IMG/VR virus record: IMGVR_UViG_3300024308_000302
Coordinates: 62,001-126,000 of that record
DNA length: 64,000 nucleotides
Reading direction: 5' to 3' (one strand)
Shown: positions 4,183-52,869 of the stretch, one piece after another
Position numbering within the stretch: position 1 is the first letter of the stretch
Layout of the letters: each line of letters opens with the position of its first letter
Program-made: the position numbers and the translations under genes
The notes under the pieces: generated by a model
What the model saw: only the letters and a program-made list of their open reading frames with translations
Databases searched by the model: none
Told to the model about the DNA's origin: nothing

Positions 4183-5316
4183 TTAACCAGCGTCTTCGGT
4201 AGTCACACCAAGTGCTCCAAGGTCTACTTCGTCTAAAGACCAGTCAGACAAGTGATTACGAGAATAGAAAGTCAAGTAATCGTTTTTGAAGCCTCGAACC
4301 GCATTCATCACAAAAGAGAACTGTGGATGACCTTTCAGAGCAATTGCAACATCTTTGATAGGTTGGCCAACAAATTGCTTAGCAATTTCGTGGACTTCTT
4401 TATCAAGGTTTTCAATATGAGCCTTGATGCTATCATTGATATGATGAATGGTAGTCAAATCTGCTTCTGGTGCGTTCAATGCTAAGTAAGCAATATAATC
4501 ATCAAGTTTCTCTTCGACAACCAGTCGGGCAATGTCACGCTGACGAACAAAGGTAACAGCATGGTGCAATTCCATATACCATTTGGTTTTGATTTTAACC
4601 ATTTCACCATTCGCAAATTGAATTACATAACCTTCAATACCTTGAACAGTATTCAGCGACTTGATAAGGCTTGGCAAATCATAACCAACACCAAACAGCG
4701 GCTTGTTAACTGGAATATCAAACTTTGCAGCCAAAATTTCTTTTTCAACTGGCATGAGATATTCACCAGTGATATTGTCACGAACATGAAGCAAAGTCAT
4801 GTTTTCTTCGTCATATCGCAGAACAATACGATGGCTTGGCGAAGTGAACTCGAAAATAGGCGAAAGATTTGCCATCGAGCAATATTTAGTGAAATCGTAG
4901 TATTTCTGGTTTTTAGCAACAAACCCTTCTGATGCAACAGCAACATCAGATTTGAACGATTTTTTCGATTTCGCAAAGAACTGACCGTTCAGGAAACCAG
5001 CCGAAATCATCGAGCCGTCCATTTTGTCAAAACCCGCAACCATCGTATCCCAATTCAATACAGCGGGTTGAACTTCTGCACGCTCTGCAAGGTTGAAGAA
5101 TTTGTGCAGTGGGCGGGAAAGAATTTTGCCATCAGCATCAAAAGCGATACCACGGGCTTCTTTTTCCATCGGAGTGGTGAAGGACTCACCATTGCTGATA
5201 TTGTAGCAAATGACAGTAGCGTCATTCGATTGTTTGTTGATGCCAATGTATTCCTTATGTTGAACATGAGGAAGCATATCGTTGATGGTTTCGATACGTG
5301 GGAAGATACTGGGCAT
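4183..5316 (-). CDS. rnlA: T4 Rnl1-like RNA ligase
   Basis: Nucleotidyltransferase motifs KMDGS (I), EGYVI (IV), VKIK (V), plus KFFN and IFEF. Confidence 0.9.
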   Translation of the reverse strand: MPSIFPRIETINDMLPHVQHKEYIGINKQSNDATVICYNISNGESFTTPMEKEARGIAFDADGKILSRPLHKFFNLAERAEVQPAVLNWDTMVAGFDKMDGSMISAGFLNGQFFAKSKKSFKSDVAVASEGFVAKNQKYYDFTKYCSMANLSPIFEFTSPSHRIVLRYDEENMTLLHVRDNITGEYLMPVEKEILAAKFDIPVNKPLFGVGYDLPSLIKSLNTVQGIEGYVIQFANGEMVKIKTKWYMELHHAVTFVRQRDIARLVVEEKLDDYIAYLALNAPEADLTTIHHINDSIKAHIENLDKEVHEIAKQFVGQPIKDVAIALKGHPQFSFVMNAVRGFKNDYLTFYSRNHLSDWSLDEVDLGALGVTTEDAG

Positions 5317-43382: not shown

Positions 43383-43394
43383 TGTGTTACTTAG

Positions 43395-43465
43395 CAAAGT
43401 GGCAGGATTTAAACCTACAACCTCCACTCGGTTAGAGTGGCTATCTGACATTGATATACACTTTA
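43395..43465 (-). ncRNA. tRNA-like element without CCA
   Basis: Full cloverleaf: TAAAGTG/CACTTTG, TATC/GATA, CCACT-CTAACCG-AGTGG, GTAGG-TTTAAAT-CCTGC; lacks D-loop GG and T-loop C. Confidence 0.6.
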
Positions 43466-43489
43466 CCTGTTCCGGCGTTTCAGCCTAAA

Positions 43490-48717: not shown

Positions 48718-48927
48718 TTAAAAAACAATGAACCCAACAAAAGCCAGTGTTAAAACGAGAGTCCAAAACTTGAGTGATTTGAAAATCTCATAAGTAGAAG
48801 GTCTGAATAGAAAATTTGGCCTATGAGCATAGACAAAAGCTCTTGCATAGCCATTTTCACACATCACCAGTTCATCAGTTCCACCACAATCAACACAAGT
48901 GCAATATAGCATATTAGTCACCTTCAT
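48718..48927 (-). CDS. small C-terminally anchored protein with CxxC
   Basis: CVDCGG and C-terminal TM. Confidence 0.65.
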   Translation of the reverse strand: MKVTNMLYCTCVDCGGTDELVMCENGYARAFVYAHRPNFLFRPSTYEIFKSLKFWTLVLTLAFVGFIVF

Positions 48928-48974
48928 TTACTCATCTTTGGATAATTATAGCAGAAACCGAAAATATAGGCAAT

Positions 48975-49247
48975 AAAAAAGCCATCAAATGATGGCTTGA
49001 AGTGTGCAATATAGATGATGTTCAGAGAAGTTTAAAAAACATCAAAAATGGATTGCTAAGTTCCTAATATAGCGACCTCATGACTGTTGTAATCGTCGTG
49101 TCATTCAAAAGTATCGCAATTTCAACGACCGCTCGGGCGATTACACAGCACTTCTTTTCGATAGGAACAATATTGTTTTAAATTTTACCAATCATAATCA
49201 AACGAACCACAGTTTTTTTGAAGAATTTCTACTTTTACCAAAGACAG
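48975..49247 (-). ncRNA. candidate small RNA (or decayed gene)
   Basis: TTGCAT-17-TATAAT; GTAATCG/CGATTAC and GTCGTT/AATGAC stems; terminator 48979-48998; no RBS-led ORF. Confidence 0.35.
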
Positions 49248-49421
49248 AGCAAGATTATAACAGAATTAACGATAAGATGCAATTTTTTAAAACAATGATA
49301 ATGAGAATCAAAATCATGAATAGAATTGATTTAAATAAAGCTCTAAATGTATAAAAATTCAATATTTGACTTATATAATATATGAGGTATTATTTTTTAT
49401 AGCTAAAAATAAGGAATTAAA

Positions 49422-49850
49422 ATGCATCTAACTAATAAAGAATTAAATTATATAGCAGGGTTTAATGAATATCAATTTATGGAACTTAAAAATAATATTG
49501 ATAAAATAAAAAAAATATTAAATTTAAATGTCTATAATTATCCAGATCCAAAAAGTTTTGATACAAATTATTATTTTACAATTAGTGGGAACCATAGAAT
49601 AATAATTATACACGATGATTTTAAACATATATTAAAATATACACAGAATCAAAAAGATATTGCCTCTAATTTAATAACACAATTAAATTTTAAATTCGTA
49701 TTTAAAAATATAGATACATTAAAAATTGAGTTAGATGATTACAATTCAGTTGAATACTTTGTAAATAATGAAAATTTTATTAATAATTTTGACGATTTAA
49801 ACGGGCACTTATGGGATAAAGCTGTTTTGGTAATATATCAAAAAATGTAA
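49422..49850 (+). CDS. AT-rich hypothetical protein
   Basis: 142 aa, AAGGA RBS, opposite strand. Confidence 0.75.
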   Translation: MHLTNKELNYIAGFNEYQFMELKNNIDKIKKILNLNVYNYPDPKSFDTNYYFTISGNHRIIIIHDDFKHILKYTQNQKDIASNLITQLNFKFVFKNIDTLKIELDDYNSVEYFVNNENFINNFDDLNGHLWDKAVLVIYQKM

Positions 49851-49900
49851 AAATAAAAAGACATATTCATATGTCTTTTTTATTAAATGTAGAATAAAAA

Positions 49901-50171
49901 CTACTTGATAAAAATGTTGATTATTTTTACGAAAAAGTTTTTAAGAGAATAATGATTGCCATCAGTTTGAATATAAGTAGCCCAAACAATATTGAAACAT
50001 TCAAGAGCTAAAGCATGATGATCAGAATGAACAATCAAAGGGCCTTGTTTACGGTTTCAATCATATTGGAATTCAGAAGATACAAGATGGTCACAGATCC
50101 AATCAAACATATAGATCTGGTCATGACTCATTTTATAAAAATGACCTTTCCAGAAAAGACACATAAGATAA
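49901..50171 (-). pseudogene. probable gene remnant downstream of the tnpB right end
   Basis: Protein-like frame YLMCLFWKGHFYKMSHDQ...QYD*NRKQGPL... with one internal TGA. Confidence 0.4.
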
Positions 50172-51301
50172 TTGACATCCACCCCATAGCTAAAGCAAGG
50201 AGATTCCTTCCGCAAGACGGCCATGCCCGACCGCAAGAATGTTAATGGCTGCGTTTACATCTCGTTGATGTATGCCACCGCATACATCACATTTCCATTC
50301 TCTTATTCGCAGCCCATCTAATCCTTTCGGCCCAGTTAAAGACTTACAAAGATGACAGGTGCGGGTTGTGTCTCTTTCGTCAACATTATTATCTAGTAGT
50401 ATGCCTGCGTTATCGCATTTATTTTTCAGCATACTTCTAATCAGGCCAAAGCCTGCATCTAATGTTGACTTTCCTCTTTTTGCTTTGAGCATTTTCTTAA
50501 TGCTCAAATCTCCAACATAAATCTCACTAAAATTTTTGACTAAATTTGTAGTGAATTTATGTAGAGAGTCTTTTCTAATATTAGCAATTTTAGCATGAAT
50601 ATTACGAACTCTTTTTTTATTATTAGCTCTTTGTTGAACTTTTAATTGTTTTTCATATTGTCTATAAACTTGATTATATTTAGTTTCACTTCCATCACTA
50701 GCCGTAGCAGAAGCTTTGAACCCAAGATCAACACCAACAGCCCCTTGACCAGACGACAATACTCTTGGTACTTCAACAACAACATTGAAGTACCAACGAC
50801 CACGAGCATCTTCATTAAAAGAAGCATTTTTAAATTCGTATTTTGACAGTTCATAACTGTCAAATACTGAATAATATTGCTTATTGAAATAAACTTGACC
50901 ATTCACCCAAGAAGCTGCTTTTGAGTTTATTGGAATCCAACCAAGACTTCTTCTTGATCCAAATGTTTTTCGCCATTTGAGTTTTTGTTTTTTAAACTGT
51001 TTTCTTCGAGTAGCATATTCTTTACAAATGGATTGAATGGTTTGACTATGCAAACCAAGTTCTTTAGCAGAACCATTGGTATATTTTTGCAGATCATAAT
51101 TTGAAAGAAACTTTTTATGTTCAACTATGTTTCTATGACTTAATTCATTAAGATAATTCCAAACAAAATTAACGTTCTTAGCCATCTGGCAAAGAACGTT
51201 TTTATGTTTATCTTTAACTCTAACTTTTAGAGTTTTTGTTGTATATTCGGAATTATTCATAGGTGAAATTATAGATTAAAATAAGAAAAAAGTCAATAGT
51301 T
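50172..51301 (-). mobile_element. IS200/IS605-family tnpB-only element
   Basis: Right end GGAATCTCC...GGGGTGGATGTCAA overlapping the tnpB stop; no tnpA; left end uncertain. Confidence 0.75.
50190..51260 (-). CDS. tnpB: RNA-guided endonuclease TnpB (rearranged RuvC type)
   Basis: VDLG, IYVGDL, VDERDTT, CHLC...CDVC Zn finger, RDVNAA. Confidence 0.93.
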   Translation of the reverse strand: MNNSEYTTKTLKVRVKDKHKNVLCQMAKNVNFVWNYLNELSHRNIVEHKKFLSNYDLQKYTNGSAKELGLHSQTIQSICKEYATRRKQFKKQKLKWRKTFGSRRSLGWIPINSKAASWVNGQVYFNKQYYSVFDSYELSKYEFKNASFNEDARGRWYFNVVVEVPRVLSSGQGAVGVDLGFKASATASDGSETKYNQVYRQYEKQLKVQQRANNKKRVRNIHAKIANIRKDSLHKFTTNLVKNFSEIYVGDLSIKKMLKAKRGKSTLDAGFGLIRSMLKNKCDNAGILLDNNVDERDTTRTCHLCKSLTGPKGLDGLRIREWKCDVCGGIHQRDVNAAINILAVGHGRLAEGISLL

Positions 51302-51484
51302 ATAAAAATTCATCCCCATAGATAAATCAAGGGGCTTTCTTTTTACAAAAGCTTTGGTAAAAGCTTCACGGGTGTGGGATTTTGCCTGTTCTCTATTCGC
51401 ATTATTGCAACGAGCAGTAGAAAACATCTGGAAAAACGTGGTTTTATGCTCAACTGGCATATCATTAAGCGTTACAAGTGTCAT
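51293..51484 (-). CDS. hypothetical protein (possibly truncated by the IS)
   Basis: 63 aa; AAGGA RBS; ends at the putative IS left junction. Confidence 0.65.
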   Translation of the reverse strand: MTLVTLNDMPVEHKTTFFQMFSTARCNNANREQAKSHTREAFTKAFVKRKPLDLSMGMNFYNY

Positions 51485-51590
51485 TGCTCAATTCCTTGAA
51501 TGATGTCTAATACAGCCATTATAACCAATTAAACACCATAAAAGCAATCAAAAATAAGTTTTGTAATAATAAATTAACTCAACTGAAACT

Positions 51591-52088
51591 TTAAACTACT
51601 GTATTTGCAAAATTTTCTTCGCAAATTGTGTTCTCATAAATAAGATGTTTCCATTCAGTAGTAAACAAAGGATCAATTGCAAATTTTTTGAATACAACGG
51701 GTACACCAATATGATCGTAAGCTTCCTCAATCATACCTCTATTATATTCACTTTTGCCTATTTTAAGAGCGACTTCAATTGCCTTTTCTTGTGTTACGTA
51801 AAGCATTGATTGAGCAGCAGCACACTTATTTTTTTCATCAATATATGGGATGTTCAAATAAGCAACTTCATAGCCTTCATCTGGAATGATTTTGTCTTGA
51901 ATTAGTTTAGTGCGATCAATAGTTACAACACCAAAAGTATCAGCAACTGTAACTGGGCTTCTTCGTGGAGCAGTAATGTTAGCTTGAACTACATCAAGAT
52001 TATCATACAAACCTTTCTGAAGAAGCAATGGTCGGCTCGCACCTGTGCTATGTGGATGACGAAGATTGACATATTTAATAAGCAGCAT
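51591..52088 (-). CDS. hypothetical protein
   Basis: Start MLLIKY after GGAG. Confidence 0.8.
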   Translation of the reverse strand: MLLIKYVNLRHPHSTGASRPLLLQKGLYDNLDVVQANITAPRRSPVTVADTFGVVTIDRTKLIQDKIIPDEGYEVAYLNIPYIDEKNKCAAAQSMLYVTQEKAIEVALKIGKSEYNRGMIEEAYDHIGVPVVFKKFAIDPLFTTEWKHLIYENTICEENFANTVV

Positions 52089-52221
52089 AATAAACTCCAA
52101 ATAAATTAGCCTTCAAATTGAATGGATTATAACATAAAAAAGAAAAATTGACAACAAAAAAGCCTACTAGATCACTCTAATAGGCTTCTTTGTAAAGGCT
52201 TTCCACCTTATACGGAAGGTT

Positions 52222-52352
52222 TGGTGCGTATATGCCCACACAGGTCACGAACTGTTGCCAGTCTGGTAGCCACTTCACTATTGAACCAATGTCTTAACCA
52301 TAAAGGGATACGGGCACTGATTCTCAATATGTCACAGTTAGAACTATACTGC
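52222..52352 (-). ncRNA. ~131 nt CCA-ended structured RNA
   Basis: GC(A)GTAT/ATACGC+ACCA; D-arm-like GTTCT/AGAAT; long arm GTGCCC/GGGCAT. Confidence 0.55.
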
Positions 52353-52415
52353 AGCACCTTTGTTTCAAGTTCATATAGGCCATCGAGACAGCCATTCACA
52401 AAGGTTAATACAAAT

Positions 52416-52510
52416 TGGCAGGCTGGTCTGGCCTCGAACCAGAAACTTCCACTCACTCGTGGTGTTTTACCAGAGATCCTATGGCGGATCTATTTTAAAC
52501 TACTCAACCT
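52416..52510 (-). ncRNA. 95 nt aberrant tRNA (Trp-like ends)
   Basis: AGG...CCTGCCA; T-arm TCTGG-TTCGAGG-CCAGA; hairpin inserted in D-loop; 6 nt anticodon loop. Confidence 0.6.
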
Positions 52511-52545
52511 ATTAAATCATAAGACCTACACTATCAAGCAAAAAC

Positions 52546-52651
52546 TGGTGGAAGCGGAAGGATTCGAACCTCCGTGCGGCAAGGTATAGGTTGGTAACAC
52601 CACCCCTCCGCTTAGTTACCTCAGAGTTAAGCCAGACTACTCTACACTTCC
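52546..52651 (-). ncRNA. 106 nt aberrant tRNA with expanded anticodon arm
   Basis: GGAAGTG/CGCTTCC+ACCA, GAGT/ACTC D-arm, GGAGG-TTCGAAT-CCTTC T-arm, ~50 nt between D and T arms. Confidence 0.7.
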
Positions 52652-52791: not shown

Positions 52792-52869
52792 TGGTTGCGG
52801 GAGCAGGATTTGAACCTGCGATCTCCAGCCAATGAAGCTGGTGAGTTAACCGGACTACTCCATCCCGCG
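52792..52869 (-). tRNA. tRNA-Met(CAT), fMet-like acceptor
   Basis: 78 nt cloverleaf with C1:A72 mismatch, anticodon loop TTCATTG, encoded CCA. Confidence 0.88.

What the first reader, a model, noticed from the sequence alone, without database searches (positions are those of the whole stretch)
50152..51305. TnpB with rearranged (Fanzor-like) RuvC, no TnpA, and a readable guide
The canonical RuvC-II Glu is replaced by Gly (IYVGDL) and a Glu lies 45 residues downstream (VDERDTT), the arrangement described for Fanzors and their TnpB relatives; both Asp residues and the Zn finger are intact. The right end terminates in TCAA at 50172, so the omegaRNA guide is predicted to start TTATCTTATGTGTCTTTTCT. 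The gene has a TTGACT-17-TATAAT promoter within ~40 bp and no obvious left-end hairpin. It may act as an RNA-guided homing or competition nuclease against element-free sister phages.
Basis: partly seen in the sequence, partly recalled or inferred. Interest (0 to 1): 0.6.

Follow-up and report, generated by a model that had tools for sequence, protein, structure and literature searches.

The report
TnpB-only IS605 element in huge phage
This is an ordinary member of a known, very large family of small "jumping genes" that carry an RNA-guided DNA cutter (TnpB). It sits inside a small gene of a huge phage-like genome, and its exact borders, its target motif (TTAC) and a natural element-free copy of the site could all be identified.

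Summary
The gene is real. Window 50190-51260 (-) encodes a 356-aa TnpB (NCBIfam guided_TnpB, E 5e-58). Gly250 replaces the canonical RuvC-II Glu, and Glu295 lies six residues before the zinc finger. Both positions, both Asp and all four Cys are invariant in 25 homologues.

The left end is not. Six independent insertions show the element runs to 51356 (1185 bp). It has a left-end imperfect palindrome and abuts TTAC (51357-51360), which is the likely TAM.

The ends are IS608-like. Across 54 loci the left-flank tetranucleotide covaries with the 4 nt in front of the left hairpin. About 24 bacterial relatives carry a divergent Y1 TnpA. The family is therefore IS200/IS605, not IS607 or Fanzor (RuvC-I reads DLG, not DPG).

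One metagenome contig joins 50171 directly to 51357, which is the empty site. The same element sits at other TTAC sites.

The relocated Glu defines a published major TnpB clade, and cultured phages already carry members. Verdict: a well-resolved new member of a known kind. RNA-guided homing is the likely function but is untested.

The parts
50172..51356 (-). Whole non-autonomous IS200/IS605-type element, 1185 bp: left end, promoter, tnpB, omegaRNA scaffold, right end.
   Evidence: Similarity among six independent insertions starts and stops at these bases. A metagenome contig skips exactly 50172..51356. Length and ends were checked.
51357..51360 (-). TTAC: left-flank target tetranucleotide of the transposase, and the inferred TAM of TnpB. 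It is not part of the element.
   Evidence: TTAC flanks 5 of 6 phage-clade insertions. It is kept next to the left end in four further insertion sites seen as loose ends. The flank covaries with the 4 nt before the left hairpin in 53 of 54 loci. IS608 inserts 3' of TTAC (PMC3201880).
51335..51338 (-). AAAG, directly 5' of the foot of the left hairpin. This is the position of the IS608 left guide tetranucleotide GL.
   Evidence: GL of IS608 is AAAG (PMC3201880).
51314..51334 (-). Left-end imperfect palindrome: CCCC, 13 nt, GGGG, with internal T-A, G-T and T-T positions.
   Evidence: Conserved in all six phage-clade copies. In bacterial relatives the same place holds a 9-bp hairpin. The single-sequence DNA fold is only modest, z -2.1.
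51268..51296 (-). Sigma-70-type promoter TTGACT-17-TATAAT inside the left end. The -10 box ends 7 nt before the ATG, so the mRNA may be leaderless.
   Evidence: 11 of 12 positions. TTGAC and a TAnnnT box at the same spacing occur in all six copies. Function is not shown.
50190..51260 (-). tnpB, 356 aa. RuvC-I D178 (DLG); G250 at the canonical RuvC-II site; alternative Glu E295; zinc finger C302/C305/C324/C327; RuvC-III D334. The stop codon is TAG.
   Evidence: The AlphaFold model has pLDDT 77.7, with G250 at the end of strand 246-250 and E295 just after strand 288-293. The best structural matches are ISDra2 and ISFba1 TnpB, Cas12f and Fanzor2.
50172..50480 (-). Predicted omegaRNA scaffold overlapping the 3' part of tnpB. 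The 5' limit is approximate. Well-supported helices: 50234-50217, 50216-50207, and the terminal hairpin 50202-50182 that spans the stop codon.
   Evidence: Third-codon-position identity rises from about 0.6 to 0.8-0.88 after codon 260. Of 41 consensus pairs, 15 have compensatory changes, concentrated in the three 3' helices. There is no Rfam match. The RNA itself was not observed.
50182..50202 (-). Right-end imperfect palindrome, preceded by GAAT (50203-50206) and followed by TGGATG plus TCAA. In this copy the 5' arm reads CTCC; relatives have CCCC.
   Evidence: The end of TCAA lies 10 nt 3' of the hairpin foot, the same distance as described for IS608.
50172..50175 (-). TCAA, the last four bases of the right end (right cleavage site).
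   Evidence: Invariant in 50 aligned relatives. All similarity ends after it.
50152..50171 (-). Predicted guide, TTATCTTATGTGTCTTTTCT: the first 20 nt of flank after the right end.
   Evidence: In IS200/IS605 the right-flanking nucleotide is the first guide base (PMC10711439). This flank differs in every insertion. It occurs only once in the 290-kb record, and the TTAC-plus-guide junction is absent there.
50057..51484 (-). Small host ORF split by the insertion: 51484..51357 (43 codons) and 50171..50057. Without the element the two parts join in frame to 80 aa. With it, a 63-aa product ends in 20 residues encoded by the left end.
   Evidence: No homologue other than itself was found.

Best explanation
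This is a non-autonomous (tnpB-only) insertion sequence of the IS200/IS605 family with IS608-like ends. It is 1185 bp long (window 50172-51356, minus strand) and has inserted 3' of a TTAC inside an 80-codon ORF of a huge phage-like genome. From a promoter in its left end it expresses a 356-aa TnpB. The catalytic Glu of this TnpB sits on the strand after the canonical one (E295 in place of position 250), the arrangement that defines a large known prokaryotic TnpB clade. The 3' part of the same transcript forms the omegaRNA scaffold and runs across the right end into the flank, so the guide is TTATCTTATGTGTCTTTTCT. The TnpB-omegaRNA complex is expected to recognise TTAC followed by that sequence. 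That combination exists only in copies of the genome that lack the element. Cutting such copies lets recombination with an element-bearing copy reinstall the element (cut-and-copy homing). The occupied site is protected because TCAA, not TTAC, precedes the guide match. Movement to new TTAC sites needs a Y1 TnpA supplied in trans, because this copy has none. Shown here: the gene, the conserved residues, both borders, the target motif, the covarying RNA/DNA structures, TnpA linkage in relatives, the empty-site allele, and other insertion sites. Inferred: omegaRNA production, nuclease activity, TAM use and homing.
For: TnpB identity. D178, G250, E295, D334 and the four Cys are invariant in 25 homologues. 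Borders come from six independent insertions and about 75 bacterial copies. One contig in run X6 joins 50171 to 51357, skipping exactly 1185 bp with no ambiguous bases, and contigs break at 50171. Near-identical copies of the element run into at least four other left flanks, each keeping TTAC, and two or three other right flanks; in X6 the element is 3-10 times deeper than its flanks. The flank tetranucleotide covaries with the 4 nt before the left hairpin: TTAC with AAAG/AATG/AAGG, TGAC with CAAG, TGAT with CAAA, TTAT with AAAA/AAGA, in 53 of 54 loci. This is the IS608 rule of target reading by GL. A full-length divergent Y1 TnpA lies next to tnpB in about 24 bacterial loci, with remnants in several more. 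Three 3' helices have many compensatory changes, and synonymous sites are more conserved in the last ~100 codons. The published homing mechanism for IS605 TnpB is in PMC10690162. The guide starts at the right-flanking base in IS200/605.
Against: There are no RNA data and no biochemistry for this protein or, as far as I checked, for a Y1-linked member of the relocated-Glu clade. The empty-site joint rests on one contig of depth 13 with only 30 nt on its shorter side, at 90% likeness, and I could not read its sequence. Exact-pattern scans for the empty site in viral and JGI metagenome contigs found nothing. There is no TnpA in the record, so excision, and therefore the 'retention' half of the published model, may never happen in this genome. 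This copy has small changes in both hairpins (T for C at the left, CTCC for CCCC at the right). The single-sequence DNA fold is modest at the left end (z -2.1) and not better than shuffles at the right end (z -0.3). It is not settled that the surrounding 290-kb region is a free phage.
Confidence: 0.75

Rival explanations
1. A Fanzor-related (IS607 / pro-Fanzor lineage) nuclease: a close prokaryotic relative of the eukaryotic and giant-virus enzymes.
For: It shares the alternative Glu six residues before the first CxxC. Fanzor2 is among the structural and sequence matches. The source contig is very large and AT-rich.
Against: RuvC-I reads DLG, not the DPG fingerprint. Relatives are linked to Y1 TnpA, not serine TnpA. 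The ends are IS608-like hairpins with a TTAC target and no target duplication. It scores higher on IS200_TnpB than on IS607_TnpB. ISDra2 TnpB is a better structural match than Fanzor2. PMC10711439 places Ealt plus D-hydrophobic-G proteins in a clade separate from the Fanzors.
Confidence: 0.04
2. A domesticated, nuclease-dead TnpB (TldR-like) that the phage uses as an RNA-guided repressor or DNA binder.
For: The canonical RuvC-II Glu is missing. There is no TnpA, and only one copy of this element in the record.
Against: E295, D178 and D334 are invariant across a family of thousands that is multicopy and mobile. Both transposon ends are intact. The same element sits at other sites at 95-100% identity. 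The 'guide' is simply whatever flanks each insertion. PMC10691335 models the alternative Glu as completing the active site.
Confidence: 0.04
3. An inert passenger: the element landed here with help from a host TnpA, and TnpB does nothing in this genome (not expressed, or no empty alleles ever met). Its conservation would only reflect how recent the insertion is.
For: There is no TnpA in cis. No RNA evidence exists. Both hairpins carry small changes. The interrupted ORF is an ORFan.
Against: The ORF is intact, with all catalytic and zinc-finger residues. Phage-clade copies of 72-88% protein identity all keep open frames, the promoter boxes and both ends, which points to long-term selection within these genomes. 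Filled and empty alleles coexist in one sample.
Confidence: 0.12
4. A weapon that benefits the phage: the complex cuts element-free competitor phages mainly to exclude them, with homing as a side effect.
For: The target exists only in element-free relatives. Filled and empty alleles co-occur. Homing endonucleases in phages are known to act this way (general knowledge).
Against: Nothing separates this from selfish homing. The guide is fixed by the insertion site and was not selected. The split target gene is a tiny ORFan.
Confidence: 0.05

Closest known systems
IS608 (Helicobacter pylori) and the IS200/IS605 family
   Same: It inserts 3' of TTAC without a target duplication. It has subterminal imperfect palindromes at both ends. 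AAAG lies directly 5' of the left hairpin. The right end finishes in TCAA 10 nt after the hairpin foot. The target tetranucleotide covaries with the 4 nt before the left hairpin. tnpB lies at the right side, with the guide RNA running over the right end.
   Different: This copy has no tnpA. In autonomous relatives tnpA is divergent from tnpB (as in IS605), not co-directional. TTAC lies 22 nt from the hairpin foot, against 19 in IS608. TnpB has the relocated Glu.
TnpB clades with a rearranged RuvC-II site (RIIr clades of Altae-Tran et al. 2023, PMC10691335; 'Ealt with D-hydrophobic-G' clade of Yoon et al. 2023, PMC10711439)
   Same: Gly stands at the canonical Glu position. The alternative Glu follows the next strand, six residues before CxxC. 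The zinc finger and both Asp are kept. The family is mobile and abundant.
   Different: I did not place the protein on those published trees, so the exact clade name (RIIr-5 fits the description) is untested.
ISDra2 TnpB (PDB 8h1j, 8exa, 8bf8)
   Same: Best structural match (TM 0.65) and a sequence match of E 6e-19. It has the same domain order, an omegaRNA from the 3' end of the gene, and a TAM equal to the transposase target.
   Different: ISDra2 has the canonical Glu (E278 by the residue numbers of the alignment) and, from my own knowledge, a TTGAT TAM. Identity is about 20%.
Fanzor2 / pro-Fanzor / ISXfa1 (IS607) TnpB
   Same: The alternative Glu sits at the same position relative to the zinc finger.
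   Different: These have DPG in RuvC-I, a serine-recombinase TnpA, and dinucleotide targets with the right-flanking base inside the scaffold. None of these holds here.
Family members already present in cultured phages (Bacillus phage Dartukuta, Acinetobacter phage HFM1, Ralstonia and Salmonella phages)
   Same: Protein identity is 48-58%. They share the same alternative Glu motif and the same GGATGTCAA right end. Dartukuta also shows a TTAT-flanked left end with the hairpin. They are annotated as TnpB.
   Different: They are different phages and hosts. The window's copy belongs to a separate sub-clade (72-88% identity) seen only in huge phage-like metagenomic contigs.

Membership tests
TnpB (RNA-guided endonuclease, NF040570 guided_TnpB) | Profile match above the curated cut-off over the whole length | tested here: met
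   197 bits against a cut-off of 100, residues 10-343. Pfam OrfB_IS605 and Cas12f1-like_TNB are both above their cut-offs.
TnpB (RNA-guided endonuclease, NF040570 guided_TnpB) | Complete RuvC acidic triad and a CxxC...CxxC zinc finger | tested here: met
   D178, E295 (relocated), D334 and C302/305/324/327 are invariant in 25 homologues. G250 aligns with the canonical Glu.
TnpB (RNA-guided endonuclease, NF040570 guided_TnpB) | Structured guide RNA encoded at the 3' end of the gene and ending at the right end | tested here: inconclusive
   Covarying helices and raised synonymous-site conservation support it. No RNA reads were examined and there is no Rfam model. Part of the signal also serves the DNA hairpin of the right end.
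TnpB (RNA-guided endonuclease, NF040570 guided_TnpB) | RNA-guided, TAM-dependent DNA cleavage | not testable with these tools
   Needs biochemistry or an interference assay.
IS200/IS605 insertion sequence (IS608-like) | Subterminal imperfect palindromes at both ends, with no inverted terminal repeats | tested here: met
   Left 51334-51314 and right 50202-50182, conserved or covarying in relatives.
IS200/IS605 insertion sequence (IS608-like) | Insertion 3' of a specific tetranucleotide without target-site duplication | tested here: met
   TTAC (or its covarying variants) flanks the left end. The empty-site joint 50171-51357 has no duplicated or ambiguous bases.
IS200/IS605 insertion sequence (IS608-like) | Target and cleavage tetranucleotide read by the 4 nt 5' of the hairpin foot | tested here: met
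   Positions 2 and 4 of the flank are complementary to positions 1 and 4 of those 4 nt in 53 of 54 loci. The rule is from PMC3201880.
IS200/IS605 insertion sequence (IS608-like) | Y1 (HUH) TnpA transposase | tested here: not met
   It is absent from this copy, from the 290-kb record and from the five other phage-clade loci. It is present next to tnpB in about 24 bacterial relatives. This copy is therefore a non-autonomous member.
Fanzor / pro-Fanzor lineage | Alternative Glu six residues before the zinc finger | tested here: met
   E295 followed by six residues and then C302.
Fanzor / pro-Fanzor lineage | DPG motif in RuvC-I | tested here: not met
   The motif reads DLG in the window and in 23 of the other 24 aligned homologues (two read DFG). 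The fingerprint is defined in PMC10711439.
Fanzor / pro-Fanzor lineage | Association with IS607 serine TnpA or eukaryotic transposons | tested here: not met
   Relatives carry Y1_Tnp.
TldR-type domesticated TnpB | Inactivated RuvC site, immobile, fixed genomic partner gene | tested here: not met
   The acidic residues are invariant. The element is mobile and multicopy. Its neighbours differ at every locus.

The most novel reading that the evidence does not exclude
In huge phages that lack any transposase, this tnpB-only element persists purely as an RNA-guided homing endonuclease. During mixed infections it cuts the TTAC-plus-guide site of element-free sister genomes and is copied in, as protein homing endonucleases of T4-like phages are. 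This would make it a natural RNA-programmed gene drive in phage populations, run by the so-far uncharacterised Y1-linked relocated-Glu TnpB clade.
Probability: 0.3. Interest if true: 0.55.

Novelty: new member of a known kind. Interest (0 to 1): 0.3.

Why it matters
The finding is not a new kind of system. It does give a fully specified, testable locus: a compact 356-aa TnpB of the relocated-Glu class with a defined omegaRNA 3' end, a defined 20-nt guide and a predicted 4-nt TAM (TTAC). Filled and empty alleles are both seen in nature. That makes it a convenient case for two tests: whether relocated-Glu TnpBs of the Y1-linked branch are active nucleases, and whether tnpB-only elements spread by homing among phages. 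The covariation between the flank tetranucleotide and the 4 nt before the left hairpin, across 54 loci, also shows that TAM preference in this family can be read from the left-end sequence.

Tried and rejected
Looking for relatives with an empty site:
- Searches of viral contigs with the two flanking proteins found nothing.
- Exact 20-nt empty-site pattern scans of viral contigs and JGI metagenome contigs found nothing.
- A search with the 63-aa interrupted ORF found only itself.
- 'Relatives' cannot be drawn for a virus record, and the 1.54-Mb source record is not held for whole-record searches.

RNA and DNA structure:
- Rfam has no family for this omegaRNA at either the gathering or the E-value threshold.
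- Single-sequence DNA folds of the ends are weak, so the hairpins rest on comparison between copies.
- A fourth candidate helix inside the zinc-finger codons is perfect in the window (50289-50266) but only partly kept in relatives. I did not count it.

Genome context:
- Reading TAG, TGA or TAA through does not lengthen ORFs in a way that shows recoding.
- T4-type capsid and Terminase_6C profiles did not hit the record. The capsid control was itself silent.

Other:
- The Barabas 2008 paper is not held. That the right-end guide tetranucleotide of IS608 is GAAT rests on my memory only.
Full report
THE GENE. Window 50190..51260 on the minus strand is an open frame of 356 codons. It matches Pfam OrfB_IS605 and Cas12f1-like_TNB above their cut-offs. 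It matches NCBIfam guided_TnpB at 197 bits against a cut-off of 100, and PHROG 506 'transposase' at E 3e-68.

Aligned to ISDra2 TnpB and to a designed TnpB of known structure, the motif IYVGDL places G250 opposite the catalytic RuvC-II Glu. Forty-five residues further on lies E295 in VDERDTT, six residues before the first CxxC of the zinc finger. D178 (RuvC-I, in VDLG) and D334 (RuvC-III, in QRDVNAA) are present.

In an alignment with 24 homologues of 56-88% identity, D178, G250, E295, D334 and all four Cys are invariant. An AlphaFold model (mean pLDDT 77.7) puts G250 at the end of strand 246-250 and E295 just after strand 288-293. Its best structural matches are ISDra2 TnpB (TM 0.65), ISFba1 TnpB, Cas12f and mimivirus Fanzor2.

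THE BORDERS. More than 6900 homologues exist. A small sub-clade of 72-88% identity occurs only on large phage-like metagenomic contigs. Each copy has different neighbours, and none has a transposase nearby.

I aligned the window with five of these loci. On the 3' side all similarity stops after GCTATGGGGTGGATGTCAA, at window 50172. About 75 bacterial relatives end in the same GGATGTCAA 17-20 nt after their stop codon.

On the 5' side similarity does not start near 51305. It starts at 51356, directly after TTAC (51360..51357) in five of six loci; the sixth has TTAT. The element is therefore 1185 bp long, 50172..51356.

THE ENDS ARE IS608-LIKE. The left end reads TTAC | 22 nt ending in AAAG | CCCC-13 nt-GGGG | ATGAAT. 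The right end reads GAAT | C(T/C)CC-13 nt-GGGG | TGGATG-TCAA.

Published work on IS608 describes insertion 3' of TTAC without gain or loss of bases, and subterminal imperfect palindromes. It places the left cleavage site 19 nt 5' of the left palindrome and the right cleavage site TCAA 10 nt 3' of the right palindrome. It also describes recognition of the cleavage and target site by base pairing with four bases (GL = AAAG) just 5' of the hairpin foot (PMC3201880).

I read the left ends of 54 distinct loci of this family. The flanking tetranucleotide and those four bases change together:
- TTAC goes with AAAG, AATG or AAGG.
- TGAC goes with CAAG.
- TGAT goes with CAAA.
- TTAT goes with AAAA or AAGA.

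Flank positions 2 and 4 are complementary to positions 1 and 4 of the tetranucleotide in 53 of 54 loci. The exception is locus L004. This is strong comparative evidence that the left flank is the transposase target. Because IS605-family TnpBs use that motif as their TAM, TTAC is the likely TAM of this copy.

About 24 bacterial loci carry a full-length, divergently oriented Y1_Tnp gene some 30 nt upstream of tnpB, and several more carry remnants. The family belongs to IS200/IS605, not IS607.

THE EMPTY SITE AND OTHER INSERTIONS. Twenty public runs hold the stretch or part of it. I laid Logan contigs of four runs on window 48800-52600.

In a food metagenome (X6) one contig joins 50171 directly to 51357. 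It skips exactly the 1185 bp predicted from the alignment, with no ambiguous or extra bases. Depth is 13, against 33-45 for the flanks. A flank contig in X6 stops exactly at 50171 (record 28), and one on the other side starts at 51372 (record 30). This pattern fits a population in which filled and empty alleles coexist.

The support is one contig with 30 nt on its shorter side. Its agreement to the base with independently derived borders makes chance unlikely.

In the same call, contigs 95-100% identical to the element run on into at least four unrelated left flanks, each after the TTAC, and two or three unrelated right flanks. In X6 the element is several-fold deeper than its surroundings. 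The element has therefore moved recently among TTAC sites in these communities.

Without the element, the two halves of the interrupted reading frame (51484..51357 and 50171..50057) join in frame to an 80-codon ORF. That ORF has no homologue in the databases.

THE GUIDE RNA. In IS200/IS605 elements the base after the right end is the first base of the guide (PMC10711439).

Among the phage-clade copies, pairwise identity at third codon positions rises from about 0.6 to 0.8-0.88 in the last ~100 codons. A consensus fold of 50 relatives gives 41 pairs, 15 of them with compensatory changes. These concentrate in three 3' helices: window 50234-50217, 50216-50207, and the terminal hairpin 50202-50182 that spans the stop codon.

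The last helix is also the right-end DNA palindrome, so its covariation serves both roles. No Rfam family matches, and I have no RNA reads.

A promoter-like TTGACT-17-TATAAT (51296..51268, 11 of 12 positions) lies in the left end. Its -35 box and a TAnnnT box at the same spacing are kept in all six copies. The -10 box ends 7 nt before the ATG and no Shine-Dalgarno sequence is visible, so the mRNA may be leaderless.

LIKELY MECHANISM. The published model for IS605 TnpB is this: the omegaRNA directs cleavage of the empty donor joint (TAM plus the former right flank), and homologous recombination with an occupied copy restores the element (PMC10690162).

Here the target TTAC plus guide exists only in element-free genomes. 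In the occupied site TCAA precedes the guide match. The TTAC-guide junction is absent from the 290-kb record. Because neither this copy nor its record has a TnpA, the homing half of the cycle (spread into element-free relatives during mixed infection) is the part that could act here. Jumps to new TTAC sites need a Y1 TnpA in trans.

All of this is inference. Activity of a Y1-linked relocated-Glu TnpB has not been shown, as far as I could check.

COMPARISON WITH WHAT IS KNOWN. Altae-Tran et al. 2023 describe two major clades and eight large branches with an altered RuvC-II motif. In the largest, RIIr-5, the Glu is replaced by Gly and an alternative Glu on a neighbouring element is modelled to complete the site. 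They note that several rearranged branches are enriched in viruses (PMC10691335).

Yoon et al. 2023 define the alternative Glu as lying six residues before the zinc finger. They split such proteins into a D-hydrophobic-G clade and a DPG clade. Only the DPG clade, linked to IS607 TnpA, contains the Fanzors and pro-Fanzors (PMC10711439). This protein has the alternative Glu but DLG and Y1 linkage, so it falls on the non-Fanzor side.

Members of the same family at 48-58% identity are already present and annotated as TnpB in cultured phages. Bacillus phage Dartukuta and Acinetobacter phage HFM1 show the same Glu motif and the same right end. The finding is a new, well-resolved member of a known kind.

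THE CARRIER GENOME. The window is part of a 290,157-bp IMG/VR 'provirus' record. That record is cut from a 1,539,155-bp JGI contig.

The record has 32% GC and 35 tRNA genes on one strand, including two with anticodon CTA. It has no ORF above 666 codons under any single stop-codon read-through. It has few recognisable phage families, and eight of its ten longest ORFs match no PHROG. Relatives of the element sit on viral contigs of up to 437 kb.

Whether the carrier is a free megaphage, a prophage or something else remains open. The 'sister phage' wording should be read with that caveat.

VERDICT. The left end, the TAM and the hairpin statement are corrected. The Fanzor kinship is not supported. 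Homing is plausible but untested.

Noticed in passing
Whole record G000 (window = G000:C1:62001-126000); locus L091: The 290-kb IMG/VR 'provirus' is cut from a single 1,539,155-bp JGI metagenome contig. The record has 32% GC and no ORF longer than 666 codons. No T4-type capsid or Terminase_6C hit was found, and 8 of its 10 longest ORFs match no PHROG family. Whether it is a megaphage, a prophage or another kind of element is open.
   Followed up: partly
G000:C1 33774-263328 (window tRNAs at 43393-43466 and 52792-52869): ARAGORN finds 35 tRNA genes, all on the minus strand, many of them duplicated (Leu-TAA at least 9 times, Met 6 times, Arg-TCT 4 times). Two have anticodon CTA (TAG-reading) and two have odd anticodon loops. 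Reading TAG through does not visibly lengthen ORFs, so recoding is not shown.
   Followed up: partly
window 50133-50192 (-): tnpB ends in TAG while the record encodes two tRNA(CTA) genes. If TAG were suppressed, TnpB would gain 18 residues (19 codons counting the suppressed TAG) read through the right end and the guide, up to a TAA stop. Untested.
   Followed up: no
G000:C1:264692-266389 (-) = L095, outside the window: A second, distant TnpB/Cas12f-like ORF of 565 aa. It hits guided_TnpB at E 3e-16 (below the cut-off), Cas12f2 at 1e-13 and PHROG 506 at 3e-19. Its ends, guide and active site were not examined.
   Followed up: no
G000:C1:139268-140506 (-) = L100, outside the window: A 412-aa HNH homing endonuclease (PHROG 559, E 2e-82). 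The record therefore also carries protein-guided homing elements.
   Followed up: no
window 4186-5316 (-): A T4 RnlA-like RNA ligase (PHROG 562, E 1e-66). It is one of the few window ORFs with a recognisable family.
   Followed up: no
window 51260-51296 (-): The -10 box of the tnpB promoter ends 7 nt before the ATG, with no Shine-Dalgarno sequence. The same geometry is seen in the five other phage-clade copies. This suggests a leaderless tnpB mRNA.
   Followed up: partly
loci L011-L090 (bacterial relatives): The family is multicopy in several Gammaproteobacteria. The 80 loci kept include at least 8 copies in Denitrificimonas halotolerans JX-1, 6 in Lampropedia hyalina and 5 in Azomonas agilis. 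Sub-groups use different target tetranucleotides (TTAC, TGAC, TGAT, TTAT), predictable from the 4 nt before the left hairpin.
   Followed up: yes
window 50199-50202 and 51324 (-): This copy departs from the clade consensus in both hairpins. The right 5' arm reads CTCC instead of CCCC, which also turns a conserved Pro into Ser354. The left loop region has T for C. The effect on transposase or omegaRNA function is unknown.
   Followed up: no
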